From IMG/VR virus record IMGVR_UViG_3300047994_000374, positions 124,001 to 188,000 of that record: a stretch of 64,000 bases of DNA; one strand, written 5' to 3'. Positions 8,797 to 43,897 of this stretch are shown here, one piece after another. The translations under genes were made by a program, and so were the position numbers. Each line of letters begins with the position of its first letter. Within the stretch, counting starts at the first letter, position 1. The notes beneath the pieces are model-generated. The model was not told the origin of the DNA. It saw only the letters and a program-made list of their open reading frames with translations, and ran no database searches.

Positions 8797-9386
8797 ATTA
8801 TACTTTATATTGGTTTGATACTGAAACAACTGGTCTTAATTCAGACTGTGATATCATTGAATTATCTCTTATTCGTTCAACGGATTATGCTCAAAAAACT
8901 TGGTGGTTAAAACCAATAAATACAAATTCAATTGAACTTGGCGCATTAAGAGTAAATGGTCATAAATTAGAAGATATTACTTGGCAAACAAAAACGGGTA
9001 AAGACACTTATCGAAATCCATCAGAGGTTATTGTTGAAATTGAAAATTGGGTAAACGAAGATATGACTCCAGCTGAAGATAGAATCTTAGTGGCTCATAA
9101 CGTAGTTTTTGATAAAAATAAAATGGAACAATTATGGGCAAGGTGCAGCTCAACAGATACTTTTCCATTTGGACGCCGGACCTTAGATACTGGGACTATT
9201 GAATTTTTTATGGATTGGTGTAAAGGCGAAATGGCAGAAGGATATAGCCTTCGAAATTTAGCTAAAAAATATGGCGTAAAAAATGATAAAGCTCACACAG
9301 CGGCTTCAGATACATTAACACTTAAAGACATTTTTGAAAAGCAAGTGGAAGCTTTTAAAAAGATATTAGTTAAACAAGGTGATTAA
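8793..9386 (+). CDS. DEDDh 3'-5' exonuclease (DnaQ/epsilon-like)
   Basis: FDTETTGL, VAHNVVFD, AHTAASD motifs. Confidence 0.9.
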   Translation: MNYTLYWFDTETTGLNSDCDIIELSLIRSTDYAQKTWWLKPINTNSIELGALRVNGHKLEDITWQTKTGKDTYRNPSEVIVEIENWVNEDMTPAEDRILVAHNVVFDKNKMEQLWARCSSTDTFPFGRRTLDTGTIEFFMDWCKGEMAEGYSLRNLAKKYGVKNDKAHTAASDTLTLKDIFEKQVEAFKKILVKQGD

Positions 9387-10389
9387 AATTGTTTATGCTG
9401 CTGGCAATTCATTAAATTCAAAGATCCAGTTGAAGAGATTTTTGAATGCCATAAAAAATAAGAATTATCGCATTAAGGTTGCAGCTTATAAAAAGTCATC
9501 CCCAGTCAATACAAATATCGATTGGACATTAGATGCTTTGTTGGATTTTAGGAAACCTTCTCGATTTACTTTTGACTCAGATAATTTTCAAACATTTTAC
9601 GATCAAGTAAAAGCTTTCAGCCCCGATCTTATTATTTCAGACCTTGAACATTTTTCCAGTTATATTGCAAATCAGTTGGGTTGCATTCTTTGGCAGTATA
9701 GCTCGATTTATATTTACCATGCACTGGAACGCCATTATAAAGAAGCAATGGCATTTAAGAGGCATTACCGCGAAGCCATGACCGCGGAGCCAAACTATGA
9801 GCAAACCATTAAGAACCTCATTTTAAATTCAGATAAAAATTACATATGCTCTCATTTTGGAGATGTTCCCAATCCCCCACAAATCGCTTCTAATTTTGAA
9901 TGGGTACGCCCCTACCATCAAATAGGCAAAATATCAAAGCCATGCAAACATAATATCGTCGCTGGGATGTCAAATAATCATAAGCCAATACTCAATGCTT
10001 TAAATCAAAACGAAGATTGTGTCGCTTTTACAGATGGATGCATTGAATATTACCGTAATATTGTAATTAAACCTTTTATCAATGAAGAAGAATATTACTG
10101 CAACTTAAAAAATTGTTCGCTGATGGTGAGTCAGGGGCAAACTACTTTTTTATCAGATGCTTATTACAATGGAAAGTTTAGCGCCTTATATTTAGATTAT
10201 AGCGATATGGAGTGTGTTACGAATGGTATGATTTCTGATAAATTATTTTTCAGTAAAACCATGCCTATAAATGGCGACAAATTAGATGATTTTTTAAATA
10301 TTGATCACGAACCGAAATATAATTCAGGAATAGATATGATTCACAAAAAAATTGAAAACCTCTCGATATATAAAACACAGGAGCTATGA
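9379..10389 (+). CDS. GT-B fold glycosyltransferase-like protein
   Basis: MIKIVYAA start, FSPDLIISDLEHFS, C-terminal G.TTFLSDAYYNGK resembling UDP-sugar-binding GT-B C-domain. Confidence 0.55.
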   Translation: MIKIVYAAGNSLNSKIQLKRFLNAIKNKNYRIKVAAYKKSSPVNTNIDWTLDALLDFRKPSRFTFDSDNFQTFYDQVKAFSPDLIISDLEHFSSYIANQLGCILWQYSSIYIYHALERHYKEAMAFKRHYREAMTAEPNYEQTIKNLILNSDKNYICSHFGDVPNPPQIASNFEWVRPYHQIGKISKPCKHNIVAGMSNNHKPILNALNQNEDCVAFTDGCIEYYRNIVIKPFINEEEYYCNLKNCSLMVSQGQTTFLSDAYYNGKFSALYLDYSDMECVTNGMISDKLFFSKTMPINGDKLDDFLNIDHEPKYNSGIDMIHKKIENLSIYKTQEL

Positions 10390-26907: not shown

Positions 26908-28197
26908 CTACTCTATTTTATACATGCTTTGCGCTAAATTTATTTTTAATTCTGATATAATAACTTCTTTATATGATTGCCTTCTTATAATTCGTAAGAC
27001 TATATGTCGATCACAATTATATTTTTTAGATATTTCATTAATTTTTAATCCAGCAATAAAATCATCGAATACGTTTTCTACAATATGTGAATATCGTCCA
27101 TAATTAGGATCTTTTAATTTAAGGGCATGGCGGAGTTTTTGTTTAGATATTTTTAGTTGGTCCGATATTTCTTCTATAGTTTTTCCAGATTCAAATAGAG
27201 AAATTATCGTTAACTTAACGCTTGGAATAATTTGCTTCATTCTTCTTTGGAGTGGAATTTTATCAATAATTTTTAATAATTGAGATTCTATAATAATATT
27301 TTGCCATAATTTCATATCTAAAATATTATAAATTTTTTGCTGACTTAATTTATAAGTCTTACCTATATAATTTAATTTATTTTTATCTGGATAGACTTTA
27401 AATATTTGTGTTTTAATATCAACGCGGGATGCATCGTCCCTAATAATGTGACGAATATCATTTAAAATTTTTTGAGTTTTTGTAATAATTTTTGAATCTA
27501 TTGGTACGGTTTTCCAAGTCTGTCGCCGGAGAACAAACTCAATATTTGAAATTTGGACATTAAATATTTTGGCAACTTTTGTTAATGATTTTAATTTAAT
27601 AAATTTTGTAAAAATATCAGGAATAATTCTAGCTTTTAGCTTAATTAATTTCCCGTTTTCATTCATTTTTGGTATAAATTTACGATGTCGTTTAAGCCAT
27701 GTTTGATATAAAGTCTCATCATTAATAGCAATCGAAATATAAATTTTTCTATTTAAAATATCTTTAATAGATGATAAATTTATTTTATATTTTATAGCAA
27801 TTTCTGATGTACACATATCAGTATTAATATAATCTTTGAATATATTTTTAATAGCTCTTGGTCCGAGCTTCCTTCCTGAATCGCCAAACCCGCGGCCTCC
27901 CGATGTCAGATTATAACCAAATTTTTGCTTATTTGATTTAAATTGTGATATATATTCGATTTCCTTTAAATAAGCCAAATTTTCATTTTCTAAATATTCG
28001 ATTATGTCAAATTTAAAATTATCTAAACCATATTTTAAAATTGCCCTATGTATTGGTAGTTGTTTTTTAGTTTTTGATTTTAATGAATCTCGAACATGAT
28101 CCCTCCATCGTCTAGTTGGATTGGCGCTGGTTTTTCCTATATAAATTTTATTGTTCTTCATATTAGTAATTGAATATATACAAAAGTTTTTGTTCAT
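26908..28197 (-). CDS. GIY-YIG homing endonuclease with repeated HTH-like C-terminal domains
   Basis: CIYSITN..NNKIYIGKT...RRW..H, E..YI, GYNLTSGG. Confidence 0.88.
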   Translation of the reverse strand: MNKNFCIYSITNMKNNKIYIGKTSANPTRRWRDHVRDSLKSKTKKQLPIHRAILKYGLDNFKFDIIEYLENENLAYLKEIEYISQFKSNKQKFGYNLTSGGRGFGDSGRKLGPRAIKNIFKDYINTDMCTSEIAIKYKINLSSIKDILNRKIYISIAINDETLYQTWLKRHRKFIPKMNENGKLIKLKARIIPDIFTKFIKLKSLTKVAKIFNVQISNIEFVLRRQTWKTVPIDSKIITKTQKILNDIRHIIRDDASRVDIKTQIFKVYPDKNKLNYIGKTYKLSQQKIYNILDMKLWQNIIIESQLLKIIDKIPLQRRMKQIIPSVKLTIISLFESGKTIEEISDQLKISKQKLRHALKLKDPNYGRYSHIVENVFDDFIAGLKINEISKKYNCDRHIVLRIIRRQSYKEVIISELKINLAQSMYKIE

Positions 28198-32240: not shown

Positions 32241-33039
32241 TTTTTAAAATCAAGTATTCGTTGTTATTTTTCCAAGCTTTTTTGGCGCCGTCGATACAAT
32301 AATCAACAGCCATATCCATCATCTCTACATACTTTTGAGATTGATAAAGATCTTGGATTGCTAAATGCTTATCATAACTTAATAACCATTTGTTTTTTGT
32401 CAATAGTGTATTTCTTAATCTTTCATGGTCTTGGTGATTCATCGTTTCAAAATACAACCCGTTCCCTTTTTGATAATACGGTGGATCAAGATAAACCGGG
32501 CAATCTTTATCTTTTAAGTATTCATCAAAGTCTTCGTTATCTACAATTGTCCTACCTGATAATAATTTATTGATTTTTAAAACTTTATCTTTAAGAAGTT
32601 TTGCATTATAGCGACAATCAACTTTATACTTTCCTGTTTGTTCTTTACCGCCGATGGGTCCAGACTTTAATATTCCAGAGAAAGCTGTTCGATTAAAAAA
32701 GAGCGCTTTATAGGCGCAATGAATTTTATCGTTGTTCTTATCCGTTCGAAGTTCATAAAACAAATCAATCGTAGGTTTGGCAGATAGCTTTTCGATAAGC
32801 ACATTGACATCATCTGAAATAACCACTTGCCAAAAACAACTCATCCAATAATCTTTATCATTAATAAAAAGTTGCAAATTAGGATGTTGTGTAGCCACTT
32901 CAAGAACAACAGATCCGCCTCCTACAAATGGCTCACAAAAACTATCGGCATCTTGAAGCAAAACGTTCATGTGCTTCATGATGGCTGGGAGCATTTTATT
33001 TTTAGCGCCAGGATAACGGAAGCAACTTAGATTTGCCAA
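32233..33039 (-). CDS. Dam/D12-class N6-adenine DNA methyltransferase
   Basis: FRYPGAK, EPFVGGGSV, NRTAFSG, YLDPPYY, LLSYD. Confidence 0.92.
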   Translation of the reverse strand: MANLSCFRYPGAKNKMLPAIMKHMNVLLQDADSFCEPFVGGGSVVLEVATQHPNLQLFINDKDYWMSCFWQVVISDDVNVLIEKLSAKPTIDLFYELRTDKNNDKIHCAYKALFFNRTAFSGILKSGPIGGKEQTGKYKVDCRYNAKLLKDKVLKINKLLSGRTIVDNEDFDEYLKDKDCPVYLDPPYYQKGNGLYFETMNHQDHERLRNTLLTKNKWLLSYDKHLAIQDLYQSQKYVEMMDMAVDYCIDGAKKAWKNNNEYLILKNA

Positions 33040-33590
33040 AGATTACCAATACTTGCTAATGAGTTATAATAAACTGCCTTCTTATTTGAACGCAAGCTTT
33101 CCTTTTTCATTTCTTCAAAAAGATTATGCTCTTGTAAATAAGACGTTTTCACTACAGACTTTACTTCGCCCGTTTTGTTCAATAAGTCTATCTGCACAAA
33201 CATACAGTAATGATCATCTGATGCGTTGTCAAATATTTCTTTATCATACCCAACTTTTTTCTTGTCGTCCTTTTGAAATACCCAAGATACTTCATATTGA
33301 TTTGCCATTCGTATCTCTTGGGATTTGACTGCAAATTTTCTTGAGCCGGACATTTCTTTTAAATCTGATTCCCAAGACTTTTCGGTTGCCTCGTAGATTT
33401 TAAAATCAGGATAATAAACTTTAACACCAATCGATTGCAAATAAGCTCCGGCTACAATTTCACCAAGCTTACCCACATAAATATCTTGAATAATTTTTAA
33501 TGGATCCGATTGTCCTCTTGCTCCATAATTATTGGATTGAAGGGTGGCGAACTTGTATGACTTATCAATATCTTGTTGACGAAGTTTCAT
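33027..33590 (-). CDS. Putative PD-(D/E)xK-like nuclease
   Basis: GKLGE...PDF...SDL...AVKSQ; overlaps the methylase start. Confidence 0.45.
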   Translation of the reverse strand: MKLRQQDIDKSYKFATLQSNNYGARGQSDPLKIIQDIYVGKLGEIVAGAYLQSIGVKVYYPDFKIYEATEKSWESDLKEMSGSRKFAVKSQEIRMANQYEVSWVFQKDDKKKVGYDKEIFDNASDDHYCMFVQIDLLNKTGEVKSVVKTSYLQEHNLFEEMKKESLRSNKKAVYYNSLASIGNLWQI

Positions 33591-34516
33591 TCGGTATTTA
33601 ATTTAAACAATGAGCTATTATTTGAACACCACTGAATAGTTTCACTTAATCCATCTTTAAGTTTATATCCTGATTTCCAGCCGAGCGCTTCGATCTTATC
33701 CATTTCCATAGCTCTTGAAAAATCATTAGGTTTTACTTTGTCGAAAGTAATAAGACCATAGCTCTTATTCATGATCGAACAAATCATATGGGCAACCTCT
33801 AATACCGAGAACTCTTGTCCGGCTCCCACATTGTATATCTCATTTGGCTGACCCTTTTCTAAAATACACATAATTGAGGAAACGGTATCAAAAATATAAG
33901 TCCAATCTCTCGTTACGCTACCATCTCCATGAACAACAACTGGCTGATCATTTAACAAAGCGCGAATAGATTTGGAAATAAACTTATCTGAACGATCCCA
34001 ATTGCCATACGTATTTCCAAGCCGAAGAATATTATAATGCATACCACTTACTTTGGATCGTGCCATAAGAATATCTTCTTCATCTAATTTATAAATATTT
34101 TCTGATCGTGTTCGATTTGTTTCAGCGTGCTCGGAAAGTGGATTAGAAGCTTTTGCATAGACTTGATCAGAAGACAAATAAATAAACTTTGATACTTTAT
34201 ATTTTTCGCAAACATCCATTACATTATTGATCCCGAATACATCTGCTTTATATGTATCGGAGGCATAATTAATTGATGCGCCATAAATAACATAATCTGG
34301 CTTTTCTTTTTCGAAAATGCGATTTAGAATATTGGCATCTCGAATATCAGCTGGATAAAAAGTATGATAACGATTAGTGTAAATTGTATTAAAATCACCA
34401 TTCGTTAAGTTATCAATGGATACAAGAGCATAACTTTCTTTATGACCATAGATAATTTTTCTTACAAAATTACCAAGTATGAACCCTGCCGATCCAATGC
34501 ATAATATTTTTTTCAT
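33587..34516 (-). CDS. Extended-SDR NAD-dependent epimerase/dehydratase (RmlB-like, divergent active site)
   Basis: GSAGFILG, SSDQVY, LRLGNTYG, HGDGSVTRDWTY, EIYNVG. Confidence 0.85.
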   Translation of the reverse strand: MKKILCIGSAGFILGNFVRKIIYGHKESYALVSIDNLTNGDFNTIYTNRYHTFYPADIRDANILNRIFEKEKPDYVIYGASINYASDTYKADVFGINNVMDVCEKYKVSKFIYLSSDQVYAKASNPLSEHAETNRTRSENIYKLDEEDILMARSKVSGMHYNILRLGNTYGNWDRSDKFISKSIRALLNDQPVVVHGDGSVTRDWTYIFDTVSSIMCILEKGQPNEIYNVGAGQEFSVLEVAHMICSIMNKSYGLITFDKVKPNDFSRAMEMDKIEALGWKSGYKLKDGLSETIQWCSNNSSLFKLNTE

Positions 34517-35322
34517 TTAGGTGCTCGATATAGATTTAAATTTGGGTTCTTCATATAATCATTCTCGTCAAGCTTATATTTACCACGCCACTTTTTCATA
34601 AAATATTGAATGTTGTGTGGCATGAATAACTTATTCACTGGGTTCTTTTTAAGGGAAGCCGATTCTTCGTGGTAAATATTTGTTTGACCACAATAGATTA
34701 TTTTTTTACCGATATTATATTTTATTTTTAAAGCCAAATCCACATCGTCGAAACACCAAATAAAATTACAATCAAACCCATTTACCTTTTTAAAATCTTC
34801 TGCTCTCATCAACATCACGGCGCCGGTCACAACTTGGAACTCTCTATTTTGACTGTCAATCTTGGTCGCCTCTTGCCCTATTTTAAAATGAGTTGGAGTT
34901 TGATGATGGTTATGAAAGACTACCCCGCAATGTTGTATCTTATTCGTGTTCGTATAAAGAAGTTTTGCTCCGACAACGCCAACAGTAGAATCATTTTCCA
35001 TAATAGAGATCATATTCTTTATAGAGTGCGTATCATTGATAATTACATCGTTGTTCAGCAATAAAATATAATCGTCATCTTTGGGATTGGCTTTGTCGAA
35101 AAGATAATTCATCCCTTGAGCAAAATTATCTTTATTATGTGGATAAGGAAATACTTTTACTTTATCGCCCCAAGTAGAAATCTCTTCTACTGTTCCATCT
35201 GTTGAGACATTGTCACGAATTAGCCATTCATAATCCAAATCATTTAAAGCTGGTTGAAGAGATGCTCGAAGAAATTTTAATTTGTCAAGTCCGTTCCAGG
35301 AGAGGGTTTGTATTTTGATCAT
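34513..35322 (-). CDS. GT2 glycosyltransferase
   Basis: DNVSTDGT, NFAQGMN, LLNND, VGAKLLY, VTGAVML, DDVDL. Confidence 0.9.
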   Translation of the reverse strand: MIKIQTLSWNGLDKLKFLRASLQPALNDLDYEWLIRDNVSTDGTVEEISTWGDKVKVFPYPHNKDNFAQGMNYLFDKANPKDDDYILLLNNDVIINDTHSIKNMISIMENDSTVGVVGAKLLYTNTNKIQHCGVVFHNHHQTPTHFKIGQEATKIDSQNREFQVVTGAVMLMRAEDFKKVNGFDCNFIWCFDDVDLALKIKYNIGKKIIYCGQTNIYHEESASLKKNPVNKLFMPHNIQYFMKKWRGKYKLDENDYMKNPNLNLYRAPK

Positions 35323-36698
35323 AATGAGCCATTCTTATTGCGGCTGATGAGCGATTTTTTAGTATTGTTACAAATTGGGCACCAAGTTTTATTATTTCTG
35401 ATATTCTTATAATATGATTTCCAAGTGTGTCCCAGATGACATTGCCATTTTAATTTTTTAGATTTATCAAGTTTAAGTGATAGGCATGTTCCATTATTAT
35501 TTTTGGCATCTAATTTAGCATCTTCTATTGTTAGTTTTTTTAAACCAACACATTCTGCGCACCAAGCTCCGCTTTTAAGGTTATTCAACGACATTTTAAA
35601 TAAATGATTTTTATTACATTTTATTTTTAAATAAAAATGTGTGTTAATATAATTTGGACTCAATAAAATCCCGTTTTTTAAAATTATTATTTTTTGCGCC
35701 TCATTATAATAATAATTACTTGAATTAACTGACGATAAATTTATTTCTTGTTCAAAATCATAACCTGATATATCTAATTTATTTTTTAGACATTTATTTT
35801 TAATAAAAGAGGCTAAATTTTTTAATTTTGTTCGTTGCATTAATTGAGGAATTTGTATTAAAATAATATTTCTATCATTGCATAGTTTAACTTTTACTTT
35901 ATCATCGATTTTTCTTTGTTTTAAAGAAAAATCGCCAAAATAATTAGAGTTTGTTTTATTTTTAGTAAAATGTTGTTCGCCCTGATGTTCAAAAGCTAAA
36001 AATTTACCATTAATCATAATTTCACTTAGTCCGTCTAATTCCATACAATTATTTCTGTCATTTAAAAGCCATTTCGGCCTTACTTTTTTAAATGCAGTAT
36101 TAAATATTTTCTCTAAAAATGTCCTACATATTTCTTCTGAACTCCAACATGAGCACTCCGGACACCAAATCTTTTTTCCAGCAATTATTTCAGTTAATTT
36201 TTTCGAAAAAATATGTCCATGGCGGCACTTCCATTTTAACTTAGTATTTGCATTAATATATTTTTTGCTTAATAATTTGCCGCCATTATTTTGAGCTGCC
36301 TTTTTAGCGTCGCCTATGTTTAGTTTAAAATTACCAGCGCATTTTGGACACCATCTACCTGCTCTAATTTGCATAAATGTCGCATTCCATTGATGTTTTT
36401 TACTACACTCCCAGATCATTTTAGTAGCGGTATTAATATAATTAATAGATAAGCAATGACCGCCATTTTGTTTGGCAATTTTTTTCGCGTCATTTATATT
36501 TAATTTTTTATTATTATCACTGCATATTCTGCACCAACTTTTTCTATTTTTTATAGAATCAATCTTTGCATACCATTCGTGATCTTTTGAACATCTCCAT
36601 AATAATTTTTGGCACGAACTATATGTTTCTGATAAACAAATTCCATTATTTTCTAATGCTATTTGCTTTGCTAATTCAATAGATAATTTTTTCCCCAT
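35319..36698 (-). CDS. Zinc-ribbon repeat protein with ELDG..FEHQGEQH endonuclease domain (putative homing endonuclease)
   Basis: Repeated G.CLS..Y......L.W.C...H.W........WC..C units around a Vsr/PD-(D/E)xK-like core. Confidence 0.7.
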   Translation of the reverse strand: MGKKLSIELAKQIALENNGICLSETYSSCQKLLWRCSKDHEWYAKIDSIKNRKSWCRICSDNNKKLNINDAKKIAKQNGGHCLSINYINTATKMIWECSKKHQWNATFMQIRAGRWCPKCAGNFKLNIGDAKKAAQNNGGKLLSKKYINANTKLKWKCRHGHIFSKKLTEIIAGKKIWCPECSCWSSEEICRTFLEKIFNTAFKKVRPKWLLNDRNNCMELDGLSEIMINGKFLAFEHQGEQHFTKNKTNSNYFGDFSLKQRKIDDKVKVKLCNDRNIILIQIPQLMQRTKLKNLASFIKNKCLKNKLDISGYDFEQEINLSSVNSSNYYYNEAQKIIILKNGILLSPNYINTHFYLKIKCNKNHLFKMSLNNLKSGAWCAECVGLKKLTIEDAKLDAKNNNGTCLSLKLDKSKKLKWQCHLGHTWKSYYKNIRNNKTWCPICNNTKKSLISRNKNGSL

Positions 36699-37709
36699 TT
36701 AAAGTCCTACTTGCAATCCTAATAATGCCCCAAAATTACCAGAAGTATCTAAGAATACACTTGGACCAAAATATGTATTATGGAGCAGAGGAACAATTTT
36801 ACCAATATTAAAAGTTATCGGAGTTATGAGTAACTCTGGTTTTCTACTGATGACACCATATCCAATGCCAACAGCCGCAATCGATAAATCAGGAGTTGTT
36901 TTAAATTGCCCATATGAAAACAATGCTAAATCTAAATTTGGAGAAAATTCACCCTGCACCGGGTTTAAAGCTATACCACCAGCGATACCAATAAGGGGGC
37001 GAGGATTGAAACTAAATGATGCCGTTGGAACTTGCTGAACAGTCTTGGCAGTAGTAATAGGGAGCGTATAAGTTTGACCATTAACAACTATTGTAAATTT
37101 ATTGAAAAATGCTACCTGTCCATTCGTATCTGTGGCAACCACATTATCTACATTGTATTGACGAGGATAAACATTCAATGTCCAGGGCGTATTTGACCAT
37201 GCTGAAAATCCTGCATTCCCCCATGGAACTTGCGTAGATGGTGCAAAATCTTCATTGAGAACCAAATTCTGTTGTGTTTTTTGATAACCAAACGGATCTG
37301 CATTTGGACATACCGCAGTTGAACCTGTACAAGGAACCGTAGTGGTTGCTACGGGATTTGGATTGACCGGACCATTGGAAGAACTTACTCCATTCTTTAC
37401 GGCTTGACCTTGGCTATTGACTTGAATAGTATTGGCAGCAGTAATCGTTCCATTCAACTTATCTACTGCATCTTGCACGGTCTTTAAATTAACACCATTT
37501 TGAGTGATGAAATTGTCAAGGTCTGATTTTGTTGCAAATTGACTTGAGCTTTGTGTAATGCCGTTGATCAATTGTTGTTGGGCAATTTGTGAATTAGCAA
37601 TTGTTGTTTGTTGCACTTTCATTTCGTGCTGGAGATAAATAATAACTCCAAGTGCGGCGACAAGAATGAGTGATCCCAAAGCAATTAAAATTTTGTTCAA
37701 AGTCGTCAT
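36699..37709 (-). CDS. Envelope protein: N-terminal TM helix, coiled coil, C-terminal amphipathic beta-strands
   Basis: ILIALGSLILVAALGVIIYL; Gln-rich coil; ends FGALLGLQVGL. Confidence 0.55.
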   Translation of the reverse strand: MTTLNKILIALGSLILVAALGVIIYLQHEMKVQQTTIANSQIAQQQLINGITQSSSQFATKSDLDNFITQNGVNLKTVQDAVDKLNGTITAANTIQVNSQGQAVKNGVSSSNGPVNPNPVATTTVPCTGSTAVCPNADPFGYQKTQQNLVLNEDFAPSTQVPWGNAGFSAWSNTPWTLNVYPRQYNVDNVVATDTNGQVAFFNKFTIVVNGQTYTLPITTAKTVQQVPTASFSFNPRPLIGIAGGIALNPVQGEFSPNLDLALFSYGQFKTTPDLSIAAVGIGYGVISRKPELLITPITFNIGKIVPLLHNTYFGPSVFLDTSGNFGALLGLQVGL

Positions 37710-37735
37710 AGTTCTTCCTTTTAACTTAATGTGCT

Positions 37736-37763
37736 AATGTAATATTTAATCAATAATTGTCAA
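37736..37763 (-). promoter_or_regulatory. Sigma70-type promoter TTGACA-N16-TACATT
   Basis: Intergenic, upstream of 37709 with AAGGAAG SD. Confidence 0.55.
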
Positions 37764-37771
37764 GTGGTGAA

Positions 37772-38071
37772 TTAAGAAAATGCTGATAACCTATTGTATC
37801 GTTCTACTGCTGCCAACAAGGTATCATCTGCATATTTCTTTCCATCTTTAATATATGGTGAATACATTAAATCCCAACGTCTTTGTTTCGGAGCGTATGG
37901 TTCCAAATAAAGTAGGCGAGCCCAATTGATAATCCACTTATAATTTTCGTCATCTCTTTTAATTCCAAACTCTATCCAGGACTCATTATTAACTCTAACA
38001 TAATCATTTCTCATCCATCTTTTATGCCAAGGACTTAATATGATTTTCTTTTTACCTACAATAATTTTCAT
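37772..38071 (-). CDS. Tandem paralogue B1 with shared C-terminal motif
   Basis: KIILSPWHK...; ends VERYNRLSAFS*. Confidence 0.6.
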   Translation of the reverse strand: MKIIVGKKKIILSPWHKRWMRNDYVRVNNESWIEFGIKRDDENYKWIINWARLLYLEPYAPKQRRWDLMYSPYIKDGKKYADDTLLAAVERYNRLSAFS

Positions 38072-38406
38072 ATAAACGTCTGTAATTTAAGGTATCTTTT
38101 AAGAATATATAGGGATTGATCTTGAGCTGCTTTTAATGTTTCAAATTTATTGTTTAATTTATTTAGAAACATTTCATTCAAAAAAGATAAATCATGAAAA
38201 AATTTAATATGATATTTATCGCCCTTTCTAATGCTACATAAATTTCCCATTGTTTTTCCAGCTGCATAAGATGTTCCGCTATCCCAACGACTATCTAATC
38301 CGCTGCAAAAATGTTGCTTATCTTTGGGACGAAAATAAATCTTTTCTTCTTCCCAATAATTAAGTATAAATTCTCGATTATCTAATTTAAATTTTAGTAA
38401 TGACAT
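38068..38406 (-). CDS. Tandem paralogue B2 with shared C-terminal motif
   Basis: EFILNYWEE...; ends LKRYLKLQTFI*. Confidence 0.6.
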   Translation of the reverse strand: MSLLKFKLDNREFILNYWEEEKIYFRPKDKQHFCSGLDSRWDSGTSYAAGKTMGNLCSIRKGDKYHIKFFHDLSFLNEMFLNKLNNKFETLKAAQDQSLYILKRYLKLQTFI

Positions 38407-38691
38407 TTATAAAAATGCCTTTATCGACATATACTTTTCTAAAATACGATCGGCGAGATCACAAGCTTCTTTTATATTATTAAAGATAATGGGTGATGGA
38501 AGTAATTGGTTAGTTGGTTCAAATTCACGATAAAATTTAATACTCCATCTGTCGCTTATACCAAAATGCTGGACAACAATAGCAAATGGCTGTGATTCTA
38601 TTAAAAATGAACGACTATAAATGATGCGGATTTGTTCATCGATACCAGATCCACTCCATTTATGCCAATCTGTTAAATTTATTTTCCCCAT
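38407..38691 (-). CDS. Tandem paralogue B3 with shared C-terminal motif
   Basis: KINLTDWHK...; ends LEKYMSIKAFL*. Confidence 0.6.
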   Translation of the reverse strand: MGKINLTDWHKWSGSGIDEQIRIIYSRSFLIESQPFAIVVQHFGISDRWSIKFYREFEPTNQLLPSPIIFNNIKEACDLADRILEKYMSIKAFL

Positions 38692-39371
38692 TTTTCAACA
38701 AATATCTTTCTTGCCTCTGAATAAAGTTTTGATGTATTTAATTGTTTAGAACTAACTTTACCAAAATGAACTACTGGCACCTCTATTACTTTAGATGGGA
38801 TCCCTAATTGCCTCGCTAAAAATCCCATATGAGTGTCTTCGAAATAACAAAAATATCTTTCTGAAAATGGACCTCTGTCATTTCCTTCAATCAATTTATT
38901 AAATGTTTCTTTTAATCCGCCCAAACACCATCCTGACATATATGAGTTTCCGGGCAATACTTTATTTGCCTCTTGCACAAAATTTAAATCTTTATCGAGC
39001 TGTCCCATTGTTGGACCTACTATACAACCATCTCTAGCCTCTTTAATAATTACATCGATCCAATTTGTATGATTGCTTTTAACTCGCACATCATTATTTA
39101 AAAATAAAACATTAGGTGCTGATGCGACTTGAAACCCAATATTTGAAGCGCGACCGAACCCAATATTCTCATTATTTCTTATATAGGTAATTCTTTTATT
39201 TTTACTTAATTCTGCTTCAGTTTCGTCGGAGGAGGCGTTATCTACTATAATTATTTCCACATCATCTGGCAATTTAGACAAATCAGATAAATAACTTTTC
39301 GTAAAATTAACCTTATTAAAAACTGGGGTAATAATAGATAATCGTTTTCTCATATTGCTTTTAGCTCCCAT
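38679..39371 (-). CDS. GT2 glycosyltransferase
   Basis: SIITPVFN, VDNASSDET, NIGFGRASN, FLNND, YFED. Confidence 0.9.
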   Translation of the reverse strand: MGAKSNMRKRLSIITPVFNKVNFTKSYLSDLSKLPDDVEIIIVDNASSDETEAELSKNKRITYIRNNENIGFGRASNIGFQVASAPNVLFLNNDVRVKSNHTNWIDVIIKEARDGCIVGPTMGQLDKDLNFVQEANKVLPGNSYMSGWCLGGLKETFNKLIEGNDRGPFSERYFCYFEDTHMGFLARQLGIPSKVIEVPVVHFGKVSSKQLNTSKLYSEARKIFVEKWGK

Positions 39372-40033
39372 ACAAATTGATATACCTCACCATAAACTCT
39401 CGACTTTAAAAACTCTGCCACATGATCTGGAACAAGATTATAAGCCCCTGCAAATTCTGAACAATCTACGGCATTCTTTAAATTTCTTCGCATGACCACT
39501 TTATAACCACAGTCTTCTACCATTTCTTGTAAAGAGTTGTTTGTAAAAAATTTAATATGAGTATTGTCCAATAGCCCGACCTCTCTGTATGTAAATTGAT
39601 CATTCATTAGCTCACATATAATTCCATTGTACGATGCGTTAGGAATAGATATCCAAATAGTTCCGTTTGGTTTTAATAATGTCTTTGTTGATTTTAAAAC
39701 CCATTCCGGATCTTTTAAATGCTCCAATACATCGGCAAAAATTACTGTATCATAGAATTGCTTTCTTTGAACTAAGTCGTGAAACAACATTCCTTCAATA
39801 TCTCCATAATCATCCAAATAAGCATTACGAGCCCATAATCCCGCGACCTTACCGGCTTGCAAATTTGGCTCTACAATATCAACCGTACAGTTTAACTGTT
39901 CTTTAAGATATTTGGTCATTCTACCGTATGCTGATCCAACCTCTAATACTGTGCTATTGGGGGCTATATTTTTTAGTATAGTAGAATTAGAATTTTCTGA
40001 ATCCATATCTAAATCGAAATTATATTTACTCAT
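39350..40033 (-). CDS. Class I SAM-dependent methyltransferase (glycan-associated type)
   Basis: VLEVGSAYG, FADVLEHL.DP, ISIPN, GLLDNTHIKFFT, YQFV. Confidence 0.88.
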   Translation of the reverse strand: MSKYNFDLDMDSENSNSTILKNIAPNSTVLEVGSAYGRMTKYLKEQLNCTVDIVEPNLQAGKVAGLWARNAYLDDYGDIEGMLFHDLVQRKQFYDTVIFADVLEHLKDPEWVLKSTKTLLKPNGTIWISIPNASYNGIICELMNDQFTYREVGLLDNTHIKFFTNNSLQEMVEDCGYKVVMRRNLKNAVDCSEFAGAYNLVPDHVAEFLKSRVYGEVYQFVWELKAI

Positions 40034-41178
40034 TTTCTTTTATACTTTCCTCGATTTTTATTGGCGCAATGGGGGCACCAACTTCCTTTTTTTATAACGT
40101 ATGGAAATTGCTCCCATACATGTCCAAATTTACATTTCCATTTCAATTTTTGATTAGCGGCGCCGCAATAATCAGACAGGCATTTACCTCCTTTTGATTT
40201 AGCTATGTTCAAATATACATCAAAAGATTTTTTATCATAACAATTACTTAAATTTATATTTATATTTGGATAAGGTATATATATTTTATTATCTTTACAA
40301 AAATTAATTATTATGTTTCTTAATTTATTTAATGGAGTATTATTAAATAAATGTTTAATGACTATTAAATAAACGTTATATTTTTTACACATTTTTAATT
40401 TTAATTTATCATTTTTAATACAAGCGCTATTATCTCTTTTTTTATTTTTATAATGGAAAGTTCCGTTATGTTCGAAAGCTAAATTTAATTTTTCACAATA
40501 CCCATCTAATTCTAAATTGTATCCATTAGACTTTTTTAACCAATTAGGGCGAACATTGATAAATTTTTCTCCAAACATTTGTTCAAAATATGCTCTACAA
40601 ATTTCTTCACTTATATTATTTGTTCGAGAACATTTTGGGCACCAATGTTTATTATCAATTGCGCAATAATATACCATATAAAATATATGTTTGTTTTTGC
40701 ATTTAAATTTTAATTTTGATAAACTACCATTATATTTTTTAGATAAACAAATGCCACCCCTTTTTTCGGCATGTTCTTTTGCTTTTATTAATTGAGATAT
40801 TTGAAAGCATTTTTTACATCTAATAAAATCTTTGTCCATACCGTTTTTAGATTGTTTAAAATTAAAATTACATTTTAAACATTGCCATTTTAAAATATGT
40901 TTATTATCAATGTAGATCGTAGAAATGCACTTTACATTTTTACTTATATATTGATTATTTATTTTATTAATATCTAATTTTGCAATTCCAGAACACTCTC
41001 TGCACCATCGTTTGTCAAAAATACTTGATGGATCCATATAAAAAATATGATTATTTTTACATTGAAATTTTAATTTAGTTTTAATATTTATGTATGATTC
41101 AGATAAACATTCTCCATTTTTTTTATTACAAAAATTTAAAATTTTTATAAATTGCTTTTCCTTATTTACTGGACGCAT
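40030..41178 (-). CDS. Second zinc-ribbon repeat endonuclease-like protein, paralogue of 35319-36698
   Basis: G.CLS..Y repeats, WCP.C, SEEICR..., RP.WL, LELDGY..LAFEHNG..H. Confidence 0.7.
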   Translation of the reverse strand: MRPVNKEKQFIKILNFCNKKNGECLSESYINIKTKLKFQCKNNHIFYMDPSSIFDKRWCRECSGIAKLDINKINNQYISKNVKCISTIYIDNKHILKWQCLKCNFNFKQSKNGMDKDFIRCKKCFQISQLIKAKEHAEKRGGICLSKKYNGSLSKLKFKCKNKHIFYMVYYCAIDNKHWCPKCSRTNNISEEICRAYFEQMFGEKFINVRPNWLKKSNGYNLELDGYCEKLNLAFEHNGTFHYKNKKRDNSACIKNDKLKLKMCKKYNVYLIVIKHLFNNTPLNKLRNIIINFCKDNKIYIPYPNININLSNCYDKKSFDVYLNIAKSKGGKCLSDYCGAANQKLKWKCKFGHVWEQFPYVIKKGSWCPHCANKNRGKYKRK

Positions 41179-42292
41179 AATTTTATTATTTCGTGAGCTA
41201 TATTATCCCAGCTATATTTAGTAAAAATATATTCTTTATCAATATTCGCATTAATAATTTCATAATTACTATATGCCTGTTTAAGCTTATCGGCTGCTTC
41301 ATCTGTATTGGGATTAAAACATATGGCATTATTTTTCCCTTCCCAATACATACTTTTAGGATCTGCTCTCATTTCTTTGCCAGACACTAATAATGAATTA
41401 TTTTCATTTAAAAAATCTAATTGCCCGCCCCACGCAGGAGCAATAACCATTTTTCCGCAAGCAATAGATTCAAGTCCTGGAAAAAAAAAAATCCCTCACA
41501 GTGGCTTAAGGTAAAAGTACAATCAATGCTTCTATAAAGATCTGACATGTCTTCTATAAATTCTGTGTAAATTTTAAGTTCTGCGTGCTTTGGAAATTTT
41601 TTATTAAAATCAGATAGGCACTCTTTTAAAGATACATCGAAGGCTTGAACAATTGGCTTTTCTTTTGCCTTTAGAATTAAACATACGTCATCTTGGTTCG
41701 TAAAGGCTTTTCCATATGCTTCTAATATTCCTGGGATATTCTTTCTTTTATGATTTTGAGCCAAATTTACAAGTAATTTAAATTTCTTATTTGTTTTTAA
41801 ATCAATGGCGGTAGTCTTCTTATAATTTTCAACATTGATTCCGTGTGGTATAACTTTGATCGCAGAATATGGAATGCCTGAATTCATAAATACATCTTTA
41901 GCAAAATTGGTTGGAGCTAACAAATAATCGCAGGCTTTATAATTTTTAGCAAAACCTGATGGCAATACATTTTTGCCCTGCCACTCATAGCACCAGATTC
42001 CGAAACGATTTTTAGTTCCGTTTGAAAGATACATTGGGAAATTCCTCATTGCTGTATAGCTAATTTGAGCATCATATTCTGGATCAGGAAGACGTCCAAC
42101 TAATTTTTCTGGCTTATTTAATTCACAATAACCAATAACATGCGGTTTCAAATGATTTGGAATATGTTCAATGCCATCCGTCGAAAATAAATGAACTTCG
42201 TGTCCTTGTTTGATTAAAGCAGTTGCAATTCCATGCCCTACCTCAACCCAGCTATGCAACTTCCCTAAAAATTGTCTAATTAATATTTTCAT
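41166..42292 (-). pseudogene. GT4 glycosyltransferase split at a T11 homopolymer (41481-41491)
   Basis: KVIPHG, RKN motifs; a T9 allele would restore EGFFFPGLE (E-X7-E) and SIACGKMVIAPAWGG in one ORF. Confidence 0.8.
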
Positions 42293-42347
42293 GTGAAACT
42301 ACTAATTGTTTGAGATATATACATTATAGGTCCAAAGGAATAATAAA

Positions 42348-43196
42348 ATGAAAAAAGTAGGTCGTCCATCAATATTAAATATAACACAGAAAAAGGAAGT
42401 TGTCAAATATTATATCGAAAATCAAATGACACCAAATAAAATATGTAAAATTTTTTCTGTTTCAGAAGAAACAATTAGAAACATATTGATATCAGAAAAA
42501 GTGCCAAGAAGAACTTGCGCCGATTCTAAAAAACTAAGAATGAAATTTACATTCACAAAAATGAATAAAGATAAGGCTTTTTTATTGGGATTAATTTATG
42601 GCGACGGTTCAATAAGCAATAGGCAGTGCTATATTAATATAACTTCCGGTGATTTAGATTTACTAGAAAAAGCCCAAAATACATTTAAAAAATATGAAGG
42701 TGAATTTAAAATAGAACAAGTGAAGGGTAAAAAATATTATAGGGGTCATACCTATACTAAAAAACTGTGTGTGGAGTTATTTGATTTATTTAAGCTTACT
42801 AATAATAAGAGTGATAAATTAATATGGCCAAAATTAGATGATAAATTATTGCCTTATTTTATATCAGGATATTTAGCCACTGATGGTTGTATCACAATAG
42901 CAAAAAAAGATAATTTGTTACAGCTTATTTTTTATTCTTGTTCAGAGGGGCACTTGCAATCCTTAAATGAATACCTTTGTTATAAGACCAATTTGCCATT
43001 ACGTAAAATTTATAAACGTACAAAAATAAAAGGACATTTTGGTAAAAAGCCACTTTTTACTTTAAATTTCAATGGAATTAAAGCTGAAAAAGCTTGTGAA
43101 TTTATATTTGCCAATACTACTTCAGAAACAAGAAGTGATAGAAAGTTTTTAATATATAAAGAATTTATGAAATCTAAATATAATATTATTATTTAA
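42348..43196 (+). CDS. LAGLIDADG homing endonuclease with N-terminal HTH
   Basis: FLLGLIYGDGSI and FISGYLATDGCI motifs; opposite strand to neighbours. Confidence 0.85.
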   Translation: MKKVGRPSILNITQKKEVVKYYIENQMTPNKICKIFSVSEETIRNILISEKVPRRTCADSKKLRMKFTFTKMNKDKAFLLGLIYGDGSISNRQCYINITSGDLDLLEKAQNTFKKYEGEFKIEQVKGKKYYRGHTYTKKLCVELFDLFKLTNNKSDKLIWPKLDDKLLPYFISGYLATDGCITIAKKDNLLQLIFYSCSEGHLQSLNEYLCYKTNLPLRKIYKRTKIKGHFGKKPLFTLNFNGIKAEKACEFIFANTTSETRSDRKFLIYKEFMKSKYNIII

Positions 43197-43897
43197 GTCC
43201 AAAGCCATTTTCTAATTTTTATCAATCTCAAAATCATCTCTTCTTCTTGAGCTGCATTATACGCTTCTATTTCATTTAATTTTTTCCACCAAATTTCTTG
43301 ATCTGGTCGATTTTTCATTCGAGCCTCGTGCCAAGCATCAAGTGTATTTTCGGCGTCTTCTAATTTTCTTGGACGATCTTCATTCCACCATTTATGAAGA
43401 GCGAGCATCTCTAATCCAGCCTCTCTTTGATCAGACGATAATCCGCCCATATCATTTTCATTTTTTTCTATTTCATCTTCTGGTGGTATATAAAAATTGC
43501 TAAATTCATTATTCATAAAATTATTTAATATATTGAATAGGGCGTATAGAATTTGCTTATCTGAATCGCACCAACCATAATTGTAGTATTCTGGATTTGG
43601 TTTATTATTTTTTAATTTTGGTTGGCGTAAATCTAAAATATGATATCGATGTGATGGTATAAAATGACACTTAAACCAATAAATAGCATCTTTAATATGT
43701 CGTTTGGGAGCCCAGAAATATGTAGGTAATTGTTCTAATAGCCAGTAGCGAATTGGATAAGAAGATTTAACTTCTGTTCGCCAATCATCCCAAGTATAAG
43801 CTGACGAGTCACAATTAGAAAAGCCTTTTATTGGCAAGGCGTTTGATTTTGAACGACCCAATTCTTTTGGAGTTGGAAGGTGAAAAAATTTAAACAT
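43193..43897 (-). CDS. Trp-rich hypothetical phage protein
   Basis: 234-aa ORF behind TTGACT-N16-TACATT (43904-43931). Confidence 0.65.
   Translation of the reverse strand: MFKFFHLPTPKELGRSKSNALPIKGFSNCDSSAYTWDDWRTEVKSSYPIRYWLLEQLPTYFWAPKRHIKDAIYWFKCHFIPSHRYHILDLRQPKLKNNKPNPEYYNYGWCDSDKQILYALFNILNNFMNNEFSNFYIPPEDEIEKNENDMGGLSSDQREAGLEMLALHKWWNEDRPRKLEDAENTLDAWHEARMKNRPDQEIWWKKLNEIEAYNAAQEEEMILRLIKIRKWLWT

What the first reader, a model, noticed from the sequence alone, without database searches (positions are those of the whole stretch)
33587..42292. Phage-encoded glycan synthesis cluster
Seen: a co-oriented run of GT4, SAM methyltransferase, GT2, GT2 and SDR epimerase genes, plus a separate GT-B gene at 9379. 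Established: these families build and methyl-cap O-antigen/S-layer-type glycans, and some phages glycosylate their virions or host surfaces. No base hydroxymethylase is visible here, so protein or surface glycosylation looks more likely than DNA glucosylation (inference).
Basis: partly seen in the sequence, partly recalled or inferred. Interest (0 to 1): 0.6.

Follow-up and report, generated by a model that had tools for sequence, protein, structure and literature searches.

The report
Huge-phage glycan module with slippery gene
A 394-kb phage carries, next to its tail genes, a set of sugar-adding enzyme genes shared by a whole clade of huge phages; the first gene is broken by a run of eleven T's that recurs at the same spot in related phages and may switch the sugar coat on and off.

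Summary
They form a conserved module: GT4, GT2, a phage-only membrane protein, GT2 and an RmlB-like SDR, with a SAM methyltransferase in a subset. Seven related huge-phage contigs carry it between the baseplate/fibre genes and the replication genes; six have TubZ next to it.

- Two HNH/DUF4379 endonuclease genes, a LAGLIDADG gene and other inserts break up the run.
- The SDR lacks the catalytic Tyr and Glu that its relatives keep.
- The GT4 is out of frame at a T11 run inside its E-x7-E motif, the only homopolymer of 10 or more in the genome.

An independent sample reproduces the T11 run. Two other divergent phages have it at the same spot, and a fourth has an in-frame T12. The downstream frame stays open and conserved in all. 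All four long-tract genes are followed by an orthologous endonuclease gene.

No hydroxymethylase, TET or C5-methylase is encoded, and neither is lipid-carrier machinery; the enzymes are soluble. The acceptor is most likely a phage protein, with host surface glycan the main rival. The tract is probably a contingency or recoding switch. No biochemistry was possible.

The parts
41166..42292 (-). GT4 (GT-B) glycosyltransferase gene in two frames. The front part is 41417-42292 (291 aa). The rear part runs in the -1 frame from 41480 to the stop at 41166-41168 (104 codons).
   Evidence: The Pfam and PHROG hits are. The intact 375-aa relative P0001 aligns to both pieces. The rear frame stayed open in 0 of 20000 shuffles and is 46-49% identical to its relatives.
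41481..41491 (-). T11 run (A11 on the + strand) inside the E-x7-E coding motif of the GT4. It is the site of the frameshift. In the zero frame its 3' end is the slippery heptamer U UUU UUC.
   Evidence: It is the only homopolymer of 10 or more in 394 kb, and the sequence is shown. An independent Logan contig from sample X3 covers it with 0 differences. L021 and L022 have the same T11, and L023 has T12.
40030..41178 (-). HNH/DUF4379 homing-type endonuclease gene (382 aa). Its start overlaps the end of the GT4 rear frame by 13 nt.
   Evidence: It matches PHROG 559 at E 6e-32. Orthologues at 52-56% identity follow the GT4 in L021, L022 and L023 only.
39350..40033 (-). Class I SAM-dependent methyltransferase (227 aa).
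   Evidence: It matches Methyltransf_23 at E 1e-20. It is present at this place only in the window, L001 and L018.
38679..39371 (-). GT2 (GT-A) glycosyltransferase (230 aa), soluble.
   Evidence: It matches PF00535 at E 3e-17. It is 52-65% identical to its relatives, with the motifs kept. It has no TM segment.
37772..38691 (-). Three small tandem ORFs (99, 112 and 94 aa) that are weak paralogues. They stand where most relatives have an Fpg/Nei-like gene.
   Evidence: They have no family hits. The relatives' Fpg/Nei gene is shown.
36699..37709 (-). Phage-specific 336-aa protein with an N-terminal TM helix, a helical stretch, an S/T/P/N-rich linker and beta domains. The C-terminal 100 residues form a small beta-barrel. 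It is a constant member of the module.
   Evidence: 74 homologue clusters were found, all metagenomic and unnamed. The AF2 model has pLDDT 77. The best structural match is a designed barrel at Z 9.5. The hydrophobicity peak is KD19 2.76 at residue 7.
35319..36698 (-). Second HNH/DUF4379 endonuclease gene (459 aa), an insert absent from relatives.
   Evidence: It matches DUF4379 at E 1.5e-16 and PHROG 559 at E 1e-41.
34513..35322 (-). GT2 (GT-A) glycosyltransferase (269 aa), soluble.
   Evidence: It matches PF00535 at E 2e-11. It is 54-55% identical to its relatives, with many invariant columns.
33587..34516 (-). Extended SDR related to dTDP-glucose 4,6-dehydratase (309 aa). The catalytic Tyr and the Glu of the Asp-Glu pair are replaced, and 7 residues are deleted.
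   Evidence: TIGR01181 scores 164 bits against a cut-off of 365.
42348..43196 (+). Free-standing LAGLIDADG endonuclease gene on the opposite strand, inserted between the 234-aa gene and the GT4.
   Evidence: It matches LAGLIDADG_3 at E 1.6e-9 and PHROG 4645 at E 1e-29. It is absent from relatives.
43193..43897 (-). Conserved 234-aa protein of unknown function that precedes the GT4 in several relatives.
   Evidence: It is 39-47% identical to the ORFs before the GT4 in L016 and L017. It falls only in virus clusters.
9379..10389 (+). Separate putative GT-B glycosyltransferase (336 aa) next to a DnaQ-like exonuclease gene. No link to the module was shown.
   Evidence: It matches the MJ1255/VC2487 family at E 4e-8, below the cut-off. 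It has no PDB sequence match.

Best explanation
This is a glycosylation module that belongs to the backbone of a clade of huge contractile-tailed phages.

Shown:
- The gene order GT4, GT2, 330-aa membrane protein, GT2, RmlB-like SDR sits directly after the baseplate/tail-fibre genes and before the replication genes in this genome and in seven related contigs of 67-490 kb. Six of the seven have TubZ next to it.
- A SAM methyltransferase is added in a subset.
- The enzymes have no membrane segments.
- The genome encodes no initiating lipid-carrier transferase, no flippase and no route to hydroxymethylated DNA bases.

Inferred: the three transferases work in the cytoplasm with host nucleotide sugars. 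They put a short glycan, methylated in this subclade, on a protein of the phage itself. The acceptor would be baseplate or fibre proteins, or the co-encoded membrane protein, rather than DNA.

Shown for this genome:
- The first transferase cannot be read straight through. A T11 run in its E-x7-E motif puts the rear third in the -1 frame.
- That rear third is intact and conserved.
- Two other divergent phages have the same T11, and a fourth has an in-frame T12.
- All four carry an orthologous HNH endonuclease gene overlapping the gene's end.

Inferred: the tract is a slippage switch. Full-length enzyme, reading E-G-F-F-F-F-P-G-L-E as in the T12 allele, arises in one of three ways: T11/T12 replication slippage, transcriptional slippage, or a -1 ribosomal shift on U UUU UUC. 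Glycosylation would then be partial or variable across the population.

The SDR of this sublineage has lost catalytic residues and probably no longer makes the 4-keto-6-deoxy sugar.
For: - Families.
- Virus record. Baseplate context.
- Conserved synteny in L001, L016, L017, L018, L020 and two contigs without DNA.
- Soluble enzymes.
- No Bac_transf, WecA/MraY family or Wzx.
- No ThyA-like hydroxymethylase, Tet/JBP or C5 methylase.
- T11 is unique in the genome and is reproduced in a contig of another sample.
- The rear frame is open (0 of 20000 shuffles) and is better conserved than that of an intact relative.
- Identical T11 in L021 and L022, and T12 in L023.
- dN/dS of the rear parts is about 0.2-0.3, like the front parts.
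- Orthologous endonuclease genes follow all four long-tract genes and none of six short-tract loci.
- Precedent for a homopolymer switch in a phage glycosyltransferase gene, T2 agt: bioRxiv 10.1101/2025.10.21.683753.
- Precedent for soluble virus-encoded transferases plus a methyltransferase decorating capsid protein: PMC9614988.
- Phage virion glycosylation, as summarised in PMC12619734.
Against: - No acceptor was identified, and no expression or protein data exist.
- Only assembled contigs could be laid, so tract-length variation within the population could not be seen.
- There is no significant RNA structure after the tract (z -1.2).
- The module also borders replication genes, and in relatives it encloses an Fpg/Nei DNA glycosylase gene. 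Position alone therefore does not tie it to the virion.
- Synteny is conserved across the whole region, so adjacency of the membrane protein need not mean shared function.
- The tree of GT4 front parts does not group the long-tract genes, and the AU test is indecisive (p 0.16).
- dS is saturated, so dN/dS cannot separate an old programmed shift from recent switching.
Confidence: 0.45

Rival explanations
1. The module remodels a host surface polysaccharide (O-antigen, capsule or similar) in infected cells. It would add sugars to host lipid-linked intermediates at the cytoplasmic face, and host machinery would export them. This masks the phage's own receptor against superinfection or loss of progeny on debris.
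For: - Jumbo-phage transferase clusters with methyltransferases have been read this way (PMC7824862; PMC12801897).
- The GT2 and GT4 enzymes resemble O-antigen, EPS and teichuronic-acid transferases, though weakly.
- A tail-associated GDSL/SGNH esterase gene lies next to the module, which suggests a glycan receptor.
- The constant membrane protein has a barrel-like C-terminus.
Against: - The 92%-complete genome has no initiating transferase, flippase or polymerase.
- The module stands at the end of the baseplate/fibre gene block, not among early genes.
- All enzymes lack membrane segments.
- None of these points excludes use of host carriers.
Confidence: 0.3
2. In this particular genome the module is a decaying relic. 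The GT4 is a pseudogene, the SDR is dead, and selfish elements are filling the space. The T11 run is just the mutation that killed the gene.
For: - The GT4 is frameshifted in its catalytic motif.
- The SDR has lost its Tyr and Glu and has a deletion.
- Five selfish genes lie within 20 kb: two HNH, one LAGLIDADG, TnpB and GIY-YIG.
Against: - The rear 104 codons are still open (0 of 20000 shuffles) and are more conserved than in the intact L001 gene.
- Two other phages, about 35% diverged in protein, have exactly the same T11 with open rear frames.
- An in-frame T12 allele exists.
- Both GT2 genes, the methyltransferase and the membrane protein keep their conserved columns.
- The degenerate SDR type persists at full length through 71-42% identity.
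Confidence: 0.15
3. The transferases glycosylate phage DNA, as in T-even phages or the 5mC/TET/transferase systems, to escape restriction.
For: - The GT-B and GT-A folds are also used by DNA glucosyltransferases.
- The module borders DNA replication genes and, in relatives, encloses an Fpg/Nei gene.
- A homopolymer switch is known in the T2 DNA glucosyltransferase gene.
- Diverse DNA glycans made by phage transferases are reported (bioRxiv 10.1101/2023.12.21.572611).
Against: - The whole record has no thymidylate-synthase-like hydroxymethylase, no Tet/JBP match (control silent) and no C5 DNA methylase.
- An NDP-sugar dehydratase-like SDR and a sugar-type methyltransferase fit glycan building better.
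- 8% of the genome may be missing.
Confidence: 0.05
4. The T11 run is a sequencing or assembly error, and the real gene is in frame.
For: - Long homopolymers are error-prone.
- The record is a metagenome assembly.
Against: - The IMG/VR record, a 91-kb Logan contig of X1 and a 635-nt contig of a different sample, X3, all read the same tract with no gap.
- Two unrelated runs give T11 in two other phages, and the same assembler gives T12 in a fourth.
Confidence: 0.05

Closest known systems
Virion glycosylation of mycobacteriophages (Freeman et al. 2023, known to me only through citations in PMC12619734 and PMC12801897; the paper itself was not held)
   Same: The phage encodes its own transferases beside its structural genes. 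The enzymes are cytoplasmic. The presumed acceptors are the phage's own structural proteins.
   Different: The host, phage type and enzyme set differ. Here there is a five-gene module with an SDR and a membrane protein in 130-490 kb myoviruses. Glycans on virions were not shown here.
Chlorovirus PBCV-1 A064R/A061L capsid glycan machinery (PMC9614988)
   Same: Soluble virus-encoded transferases work with SAM methyltransferases on deoxyhexose-type sugars. Mutations, insertions and truncations in the transferase gene give antigenic variants with shorter glycans.
   Different: That is a eukaryotic virus with unrelated sequences and a single multidomain protein. A GT2-MT-GT4 fusion of 1141 aa exists elsewhere in this genome, not in the window.
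Surface-polysaccharide modification clusters of jumbo cyanophages (PMC7824862, PMC12801897)
   Same: These are clusters of several transferase families with NDP-sugar enzymes and O-methyltransferases in very large phages.
   Different: Those clusters are sporadic and polymorphic between related phages. This one is a fixed backbone element with constant order and a constant membrane protein partner.
Contingency locus in the T2 alpha-glucosyltransferase gene agt (bioRxiv 10.1101/2025.10.21.683753)
   Same: An A/T homopolymer inside a phage glycosyltransferase gene gives reversible frameshifts.
   Different: T2 agt acts on DNA, the tract is 9 nt long, and switching was measured in the laboratory. 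Here the evidence is a natural allele series (T11 three times, T12 once) in metagenomes. The tract lies in the catalytic motif and is linked to a homing endonuclease gene.
Phase-variable LOS/LPS glycosyltransferase genes of Neisseria, Haemophilus and Campylobacter (my own knowledge, not tested here)
   Same: Homopolymer tracts in transferase genes switch surface glycan structures on and off.
   Different: Those are cellular genes, mostly with poly-G/C tracts near the 5' end.
Programmed -1 frameshifts (dnaX, phage tail chaperone G/GT) and transcriptional slippage at A/T runs (my own knowledge)
   Same: There is a perfect X XXY YYZ heptamer at the 3' end of the run, and a run of 11 is long enough for polymerase slippage. 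The shift site is conserved in three homologues.
   Different: No stimulatory structure was found. Most family members have no tract and are read straight through. No product ratio is known.

Membership tests
GT4-type GT-B glycosyltransferase | N-terminal Glyco_transf_4 domain | tested here: met
   PF13439 scores 33.8 bits against a cut-off of 28.5, and PHROG 2170 gives E 2e-20.
GT4-type GT-B glycosyltransferase | C-terminal Glycos_transf_1 nucleotide-sugar domain in one reading frame | tested here: not met
   The domain starts in the 291-aa ORF (11.3 bits) and continues in the -1 frame after the T11 run. Relatives carry PF00534.
GT4-type GT-B glycosyltransferase | E-x7-E motif (defining role known from my own knowledge) | tested here: inconclusive
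   Relatives read E-[GC]-F-[YW]-[FM]-P-G-L-E. The window would give E-x8-E after a -1 shift, as does the in-frame T12 allele of L023. Nine T's would give E-x7-E.
GT2 (GT-A) glycosyltransferases, both genes | Glycos_transf_2 domain above the cut-off, with acidic motifs conserved among orthologues | tested here: met
   The scores are 63.5 and 44.3 bits against a cut-off of 23.3. The N-N-D, F-D-D-V-D and F-E-D-T columns are kept.
dTDP-glucose 4,6-dehydratase (RmlB) | Equivalog score | tested here: not met
   TIGR01181 scores 164 bits against a cut-off of 365.
dTDP-glucose 4,6-dehydratase (RmlB) | Catalytic Tyr-x3-Lys and the Asp-Glu pair (roles known from my own knowledge) | tested here: not met
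   The window has E-N-I-Y-K where relatives and PDB enzymes have Y-S-x-S-K, and S-D-Q where they have T-D-E. Four relatives are canonical.
Class I SAM methyltransferase | Methyltransf_23/11/12 domain | tested here: met
   The match is E 1e-20 at 74 bits against a cut-off of 27. The substrate was not tested.
Contingency locus (phase-variable simple repeat) | Repeat inside a coding region, with in-frame and out-of-frame alleles among relatives and an intact downstream frame | tested here: met
   T11 is found in the window, L021 and L022, and T12 in L023. The rear frames of 104-106 codons are open.
Contingency locus (phase-variable simple repeat) | Length variation within one population and an elevated reversible mutation rate | not testable with these tools
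   Only Logan contigs were available, and they drop minority variants.
Programmed -1 ribosomal frameshift | Slippery heptamer X XXY YYZ in the zero frame leading into the downstream frame | tested here: met
   U UUU UUC is followed by CCA of the rear frame (and the frame arithmetic in the report).
Programmed -1 ribosomal frameshift | Stimulatory downstream RNA structure | tested here: not met
   The 91 nt after the run fold no better than shuffles (z -1.23).
Phage DNA glycosylation systems | An enzyme that makes a hydroxymethyl pyrimidine acceptor (ThyA-like hydroxymethylase, or C5 methylase plus TET/JBP) | tested here: not met
   The whole record has no PF00303, PF12851 or PF00145. The TET control was silent, and the genome is 92% complete.
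Lipid-carrier surface glycan pathway (Wzx/Wzy or similar) encoded by the phage | Initiating phosphoglycosyl transferase and flippase | tested here: not met
   There is no PF02397, PF00953 or PF01943. Host enzymes could still serve.
Phage virion glycosylation | Glycans attached to virion proteins | not testable with these tools
   Only gene position is known: the module follows the baseplate/fibre genes.

The most novel reading that the evidence does not exclude
The T11/T12 run in the catalytic motif of the GT4 gene is a maintained switch, shared by a subclade of huge phages, that makes their glycan decoration variable. It owes its origin to the homing endonuclease gene that always follows it. 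In this reading the extra Phe codon is the scar that protects the donor genome's copy of the conserved E-x7-E coding sequence from cleavage. The slippery run it created now also gates translation of the endonuclease ORF that overlaps the end of the shifted frame.
Probability: 0.3. Interest if true: 0.7.

Novelty: new variant of a known kind. Interest (0 to 1): 0.5.

Why it matters
Phage-encoded glycan clusters are known, but their targets are mostly guessed. Here the cluster is a fixed backbone element of an uncultured clade of 130-490 kb phages and always comes with one phage-only membrane protein. That gives a defined five-gene unit to express and test.

The recurring T11/T12 tract is a natural allele series for a slippage switch in a phage glycosyltransferase gene. 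It comes from environmental genomes and complements the recent laboratory report of contingency loci in T2 and T4. If the switch is real, virion or surface glycosylation in these phages is heterogeneous by design. That would bear on receptor masking, on defence evasion and on how such genes should be annotated: as one recoded gene, not as two ORFs or a pseudogene.

The strict link between the tract and a homing endonuclease gene suggests a way in which selfish elements create hypermutable sites in conserved genes.

Tried and rejected
- Phage database searches found nothing: megablast of 33000-43000 and tblastn of TubZ against 50,697 phage records. No cultured relative could be named.
- Rfam over 29000-52000 found no family, so there is no intron or guide RNA by known models.
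- The window has no tRNA genes.
- The promoter and terminator scan was not above shuffles: 92 against 83 promoters and 14 against 9.7 terminators. Operon structure is therefore not claimed.
- The RNA fold after the tract was not significant.
- The 336-aa protein stayed unexplained.
  - Pfam, PHROGs and NCBIfam gave nothing.
  - A profile against PDB sequences gave nothing.
  - Foldseek gave only weak barrel hits.
  - The Atlas gave only unnamed virus clusters.
  - A second model, from a 7-sequence alignment of residues 86-336, was poor for the middle domain (pLDDT 61.6) and was not searched.
  - A spanin-like or LptC-like reading was considered, but Z 5.9 is within noise.
- dN/dS was computed but dS is saturated. 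It shows only that the rear frames are not free of constraint over the whole divergence.
- The tree of 119 GT4 front parts does not group the long-tract genes, and the AU test gives p 0.16. A single origin is neither shown nor rejected.
- Two-piece function of the GT4 was considered unlikely, because the break lies inside the second Rossmann domain.
- The Freeman et al. paper was not held.
- Complex prediction and the large representative search were not used.

Full report
**Context.** The window is bases 124001-188000 of a single 394,192-bp contig with 36% G+C. It is held as an IMG/VR virus record, linear, with a CheckV completeness of 92%. Public runs that hold it are moss metagenomes.

Upstream of the finding, on the same strand, lies a contractile-tail baseplate block. 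It holds a sheath-initiator-like gene, a 1364-aa Baseplate_J protein, a 2368-aa protein and a 1250-aa protein with a dockerin-like repeat. Downstream lie TubZ, a GH25 lysozyme, helicases, DnaB, ribonucleotide reductase and PhoH. No record in the phage collection is similar at DNA level or to TubZ. The phage is therefore an uncultured huge myovirus.

**Check of the observation.**
- GT4 at 41417-42292;
- a class I SAM methyltransferase at 39350-40033;
- GT2 at 38679-39371;
- GT2 at 34513-35322;
- an extended SDR at 33587-34516, all five on the minus strand;
- a weakly assigned GT-B gene at 9379-10389 on the plus strand.

The run is not contiguous. Between the enzymes lie:
- an HNH/DUF4379 endonuclease gene at 40030-41178;
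- three small paralogous ORFs at 37772-38691;
- a 336-aa membrane protein gene at 36699-37709;
- a second HNH/DUF4379 gene at 35319-36698.

A LAGLIDADG gene on the other strand (42348-43196) precedes the GT4.

**A conserved module.** The closest IMG/VR relative is L001. It has, in one direction, the two giant proteins, an intact 375-aa GT4, the methyltransferase, GT2, an Fpg/Nei-like gene, the membrane protein, GT2, SDR and TubZ, with no endonuclease genes.

The membrane protein has 74 homologue clusters. All are metagenomic and unnamed, and several lie on contigs of 200-490 kb. The contigs I could read show the same order. They are L016, L017, L018, a 254-kb contig without DNA, and L020, a 383-kb contig binned with a Chitinophagales MAG.

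Constant members are GT4, GT2, the membrane protein, GT2 and the SDR. A 234-aa protein precedes the GT4 in several contigs. The methyltransferase is present only in the window, L001 and L018. The Fpg/Nei gene is replaced in the window by the three small ORFs. G+C among these contigs ranges from 26 to 46%, so the clade is broad.

**The GT4 gene.**

*The break.* The 291-aa ORF covers only positions 21-267 of a 374-position PHROG profile. The next ORF (41166-41450) matches residues 281-374 of the L001 enzyme. The break lies in a run of eleven T's at 41481-41491, the only homopolymer of ten or more in the whole genome.

It sits in the motif that relatives read as E-G-F-Y-F-P-G-L-E, which is the E-x7-E signature of this enzyme class (the role of the motif is from my own knowledge).

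*The tract is real.* A 91-kb Logan contig of run X1 matches the stretch exactly. A 635-nt contig of a different sample and study (X3) spans 40911-41545 without a difference or gap.

*The rear part is not decaying.* Its 104 codons are open, whereas 0 of 20000 shuffles were, and the other two frames hold 7 and 18 stops. It is 46-49% identical to L016-L018, more than the rear part of the intact L001 gene at 34-35%.

*The family.* Among the 120 best of 574 homologues almost all are 372-384 aa long. Three are cut short at the same place and read E-G-F-F-F-F-Q-D: the window, P0172 and P0176. The DNA of the latter two (L021 and L022, from unrelated runs) has the same GGA-T11-CCAGGAC, with open rear frames of 105 and 106 codons.

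The three genes are only 63-66% identical in their front parts. Their rear parts are 56-64% identical, no less than among in-frame genes. Rough dN/dS is 0.2-0.3 in both parts (dS is saturated).

A fourth gene (P0230, L023) has T12 in frame and reads E-G-F-F-F-F-P-G-L-E. L024 has an interrupted run and L001 has T-A-T in the middle.

*Routes to a full-length product.* In the zero frame the run ends in U UUU UUC followed by CCA of the rear frame. Three events would all give the product that the T12 allele encodes directly:
- a -1 ribosomal shift;
- one extra U added in transcription;
- one extra T added in replication.

No stimulatory RNA fold follows the run.

**Link to a homing endonuclease.** All four long-tract genes are followed at once by orthologous DUF4379/HNH genes that are 48-56% identical. 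The start codons of these genes overlap the last codons of the GT4 rear frame.

None of six loci with a short or interrupted tract has such a gene. These are L001, L016, L017, L018, L024 and the contig of P0136, the window's nearest GT4 at 77% identity.

The tree of front parts does not group the four. A single clade is not rejected either. Tract and endonuclease gene may travel together, or the tract may be a consequence of the endonuclease. That is inference.

**The SDR.** It scores best against dTDP-glucose 4,6-dehydratase, but far below the equivalog cut-off. Aligned to solved dehydratases and to four orthologues, it differs in three ways:
- S-D-Q where they have T-D-E;
- E-N-I-Y-K where they have Y-S-A-S-K;
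- seven residues missing after the fourth strand.

It is 40-42% identical to orthologues that are 72-84% identical to each other. A small sublineage shares the loss of the Glu and the deletion; it consists of P0078 at 71%, P0079, P0080 and P0096. One other member also lacks the Tyr.

The protein has stayed full-length through this divergence. It is more likely a changed or non-catalytic form than a fresh pseudogene.

**The membrane protein.**
- It has one N-terminal hydrophobic helix, the only TM segment in the module.
- A helical stretch follows, then a linker rich in S, T, P and N.
- Beta domains follow. The last 100 residues model with pLDDT above 90 as a small barrel.
- The best structural matches are designed barrels, at Z 9.5 and 6.1.
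- Foldseek and the Atlas give only weak outer-membrane-barrel hints.
- The chain ends in G-L-x-V-G-F/L in most homologues. This resembles an outer-membrane insertion signal, a point from my own knowledge and only a lead.

Its function remains open.

**What is glycosylated.**

*DNA is unlikely.* The record has no thymidylate-synthase-like hydroxymethylase, no Tet/JBP and no C5 methylase.

*A self-contained surface pathway is not encoded.* There is no initiating transferase of either family and no Wzx flippase.

*The enzymes are soluble*.

Together with the position after the baseplate and fibre genes, this favours direct glycosylation of phage proteins in the cytoplasm. That is the case in mycobacteriophages (as summarised in PMC12619734) and in chloroviruses (PMC9614988).

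Modification of host lipid-linked intermediates, the reading given to jumbo-phage clusters in PMC7824862, remains a serious rival. A tail-type GDSL esterase gene next to the module points to a glycan receptor.

**Other sugar loci in the genome, outside the window.**
- At 229.6-237.8 kb lies a cluster with a UXS-like SDR, a sugar C-methyltransferase, a cupin, a GT4-like gene and a 1141-aa GT2-methyltransferase-GT4 fusion. It stands beside a collagen-repeat protein.
- At 337-343 kb lies a set with nucleotidyltransferase-like, adh_short, dehydroquinate-synthase-like, kinase-like and methyltransferase-DUF7796 genes.
- At 390.5-392.8 kb lie a GT1 gene and a polysaccharide pyruvyl transferase gene.

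They are not recent copies of the window's genes.

Two things go beyond it. The first is the fixed five-gene module with its own membrane protein in a whole clade of huge phages. The second is the recurring T11/T12 tract in the catalytic motif, tied to a homing endonuclease gene.

A homopolymer switch in a phage glycosyltransferase gene was reported in 2025 for T2 agt. The tract is therefore a new variant rather than a new principle. Whether it works by replication slippage, transcription slippage or ribosomal shifting could not be tested here. Whether the glycan ends up on virions could not be tested either.

Noticed in passing
window 49804-50928 (+): A TnpB/IS605 OrfB-type gene (OrfB_IS605 plus the Cas12f1-like TNB domain) sits between the 2368-aa and 1250-aa baseplate/fibre genes, which are adjacent in relatives. 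A second TnpB-like gene lies at G000 387458-388747.
   Followed up: partly
window 32233-33590 (-): A D12-class N6-adenine DNA methyltransferase gene and an unassigned 187-aa ORF lie between the SDR and TubZ only in this genome. In relatives the SDR and TubZ genes are neighbours.
   Followed up: partly
window 43977-45859 (-): A 462-aa protein has a weak tail-protein-like N-terminus and a GDSL/SGNH esterase domain, and a 185-aa S/T-rich ORF lies beside it. Both are absent from the relatives read. This suggests an acetylated glycan receptor.
   Followed up: no
G000:C1:229646-237788 (L013), outside the window: A second sugar cluster holds a GFO/IDH/MocA oxidoreductase, a UXS-like SDR, an NDP-hexose C-methyltransferase type, a cupin, a GT4-like gene and a 1141-aa GT2-methyltransferase-GT4 fusion. 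A patatin-like gene and a collagen-repeat protein lie nearby.
   Followed up: partly
G000:C1:337070-343038 (L014) and 390532-392800 (L015), outside the window: One set has nucleotidyltransferase-like, adh_short, dehydroquinate-synthase-like, kinase-like and methyltransferase-DUF7796 genes. Separately there are a GT1 gene and a polysaccharide pyruvyl transferase gene. A microbial-type PARG gene lies at 386061-386939.
   Followed up: no
L020 (JAIXLO010000160.1, 383-kb contig): A contig with the same module but no TubZ at this place, and 26% G+C, is binned in a Chitinophagales MAG. Together with the barrel-like end of the 336-aa protein, this is a weak lead to a Gram-negative Bacteroidota host.
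   Followed up: partly
window 37772-38691 (-): Three tandem small ORFs are weak paralogues at 27-37% identity and share a C-terminal pattern. The window's nearest relative by GT4 (the contig of P0136) has a longer row of similar-sized ORFs at the same place.
   Followed up: partly
window 37128-39678, run X7: A run from another study and another labelled organism holds pieces 95-99% alike over this part only, with a 3-nt deletion at 38016. Nothing was laid beyond about 40.6 kb. A related phage may lack the endonuclease and carry a different GT4.
   Followed up: no
window 26908-28197 (-): A GIY-YIG homing endonuclease gene lies among the replication genes. With the two HNH genes, the LAGLIDADG gene and TnpB, that makes five selfish genes within about 24 kb.
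   Followed up: no
window 8793-10389 (+): The separate GT-B gene overlaps the end of a DnaQ-like 3'-5' exonuclease gene by 8 nt. It has no sequence match among solved structures, and its role is open.
   Followed up: partly
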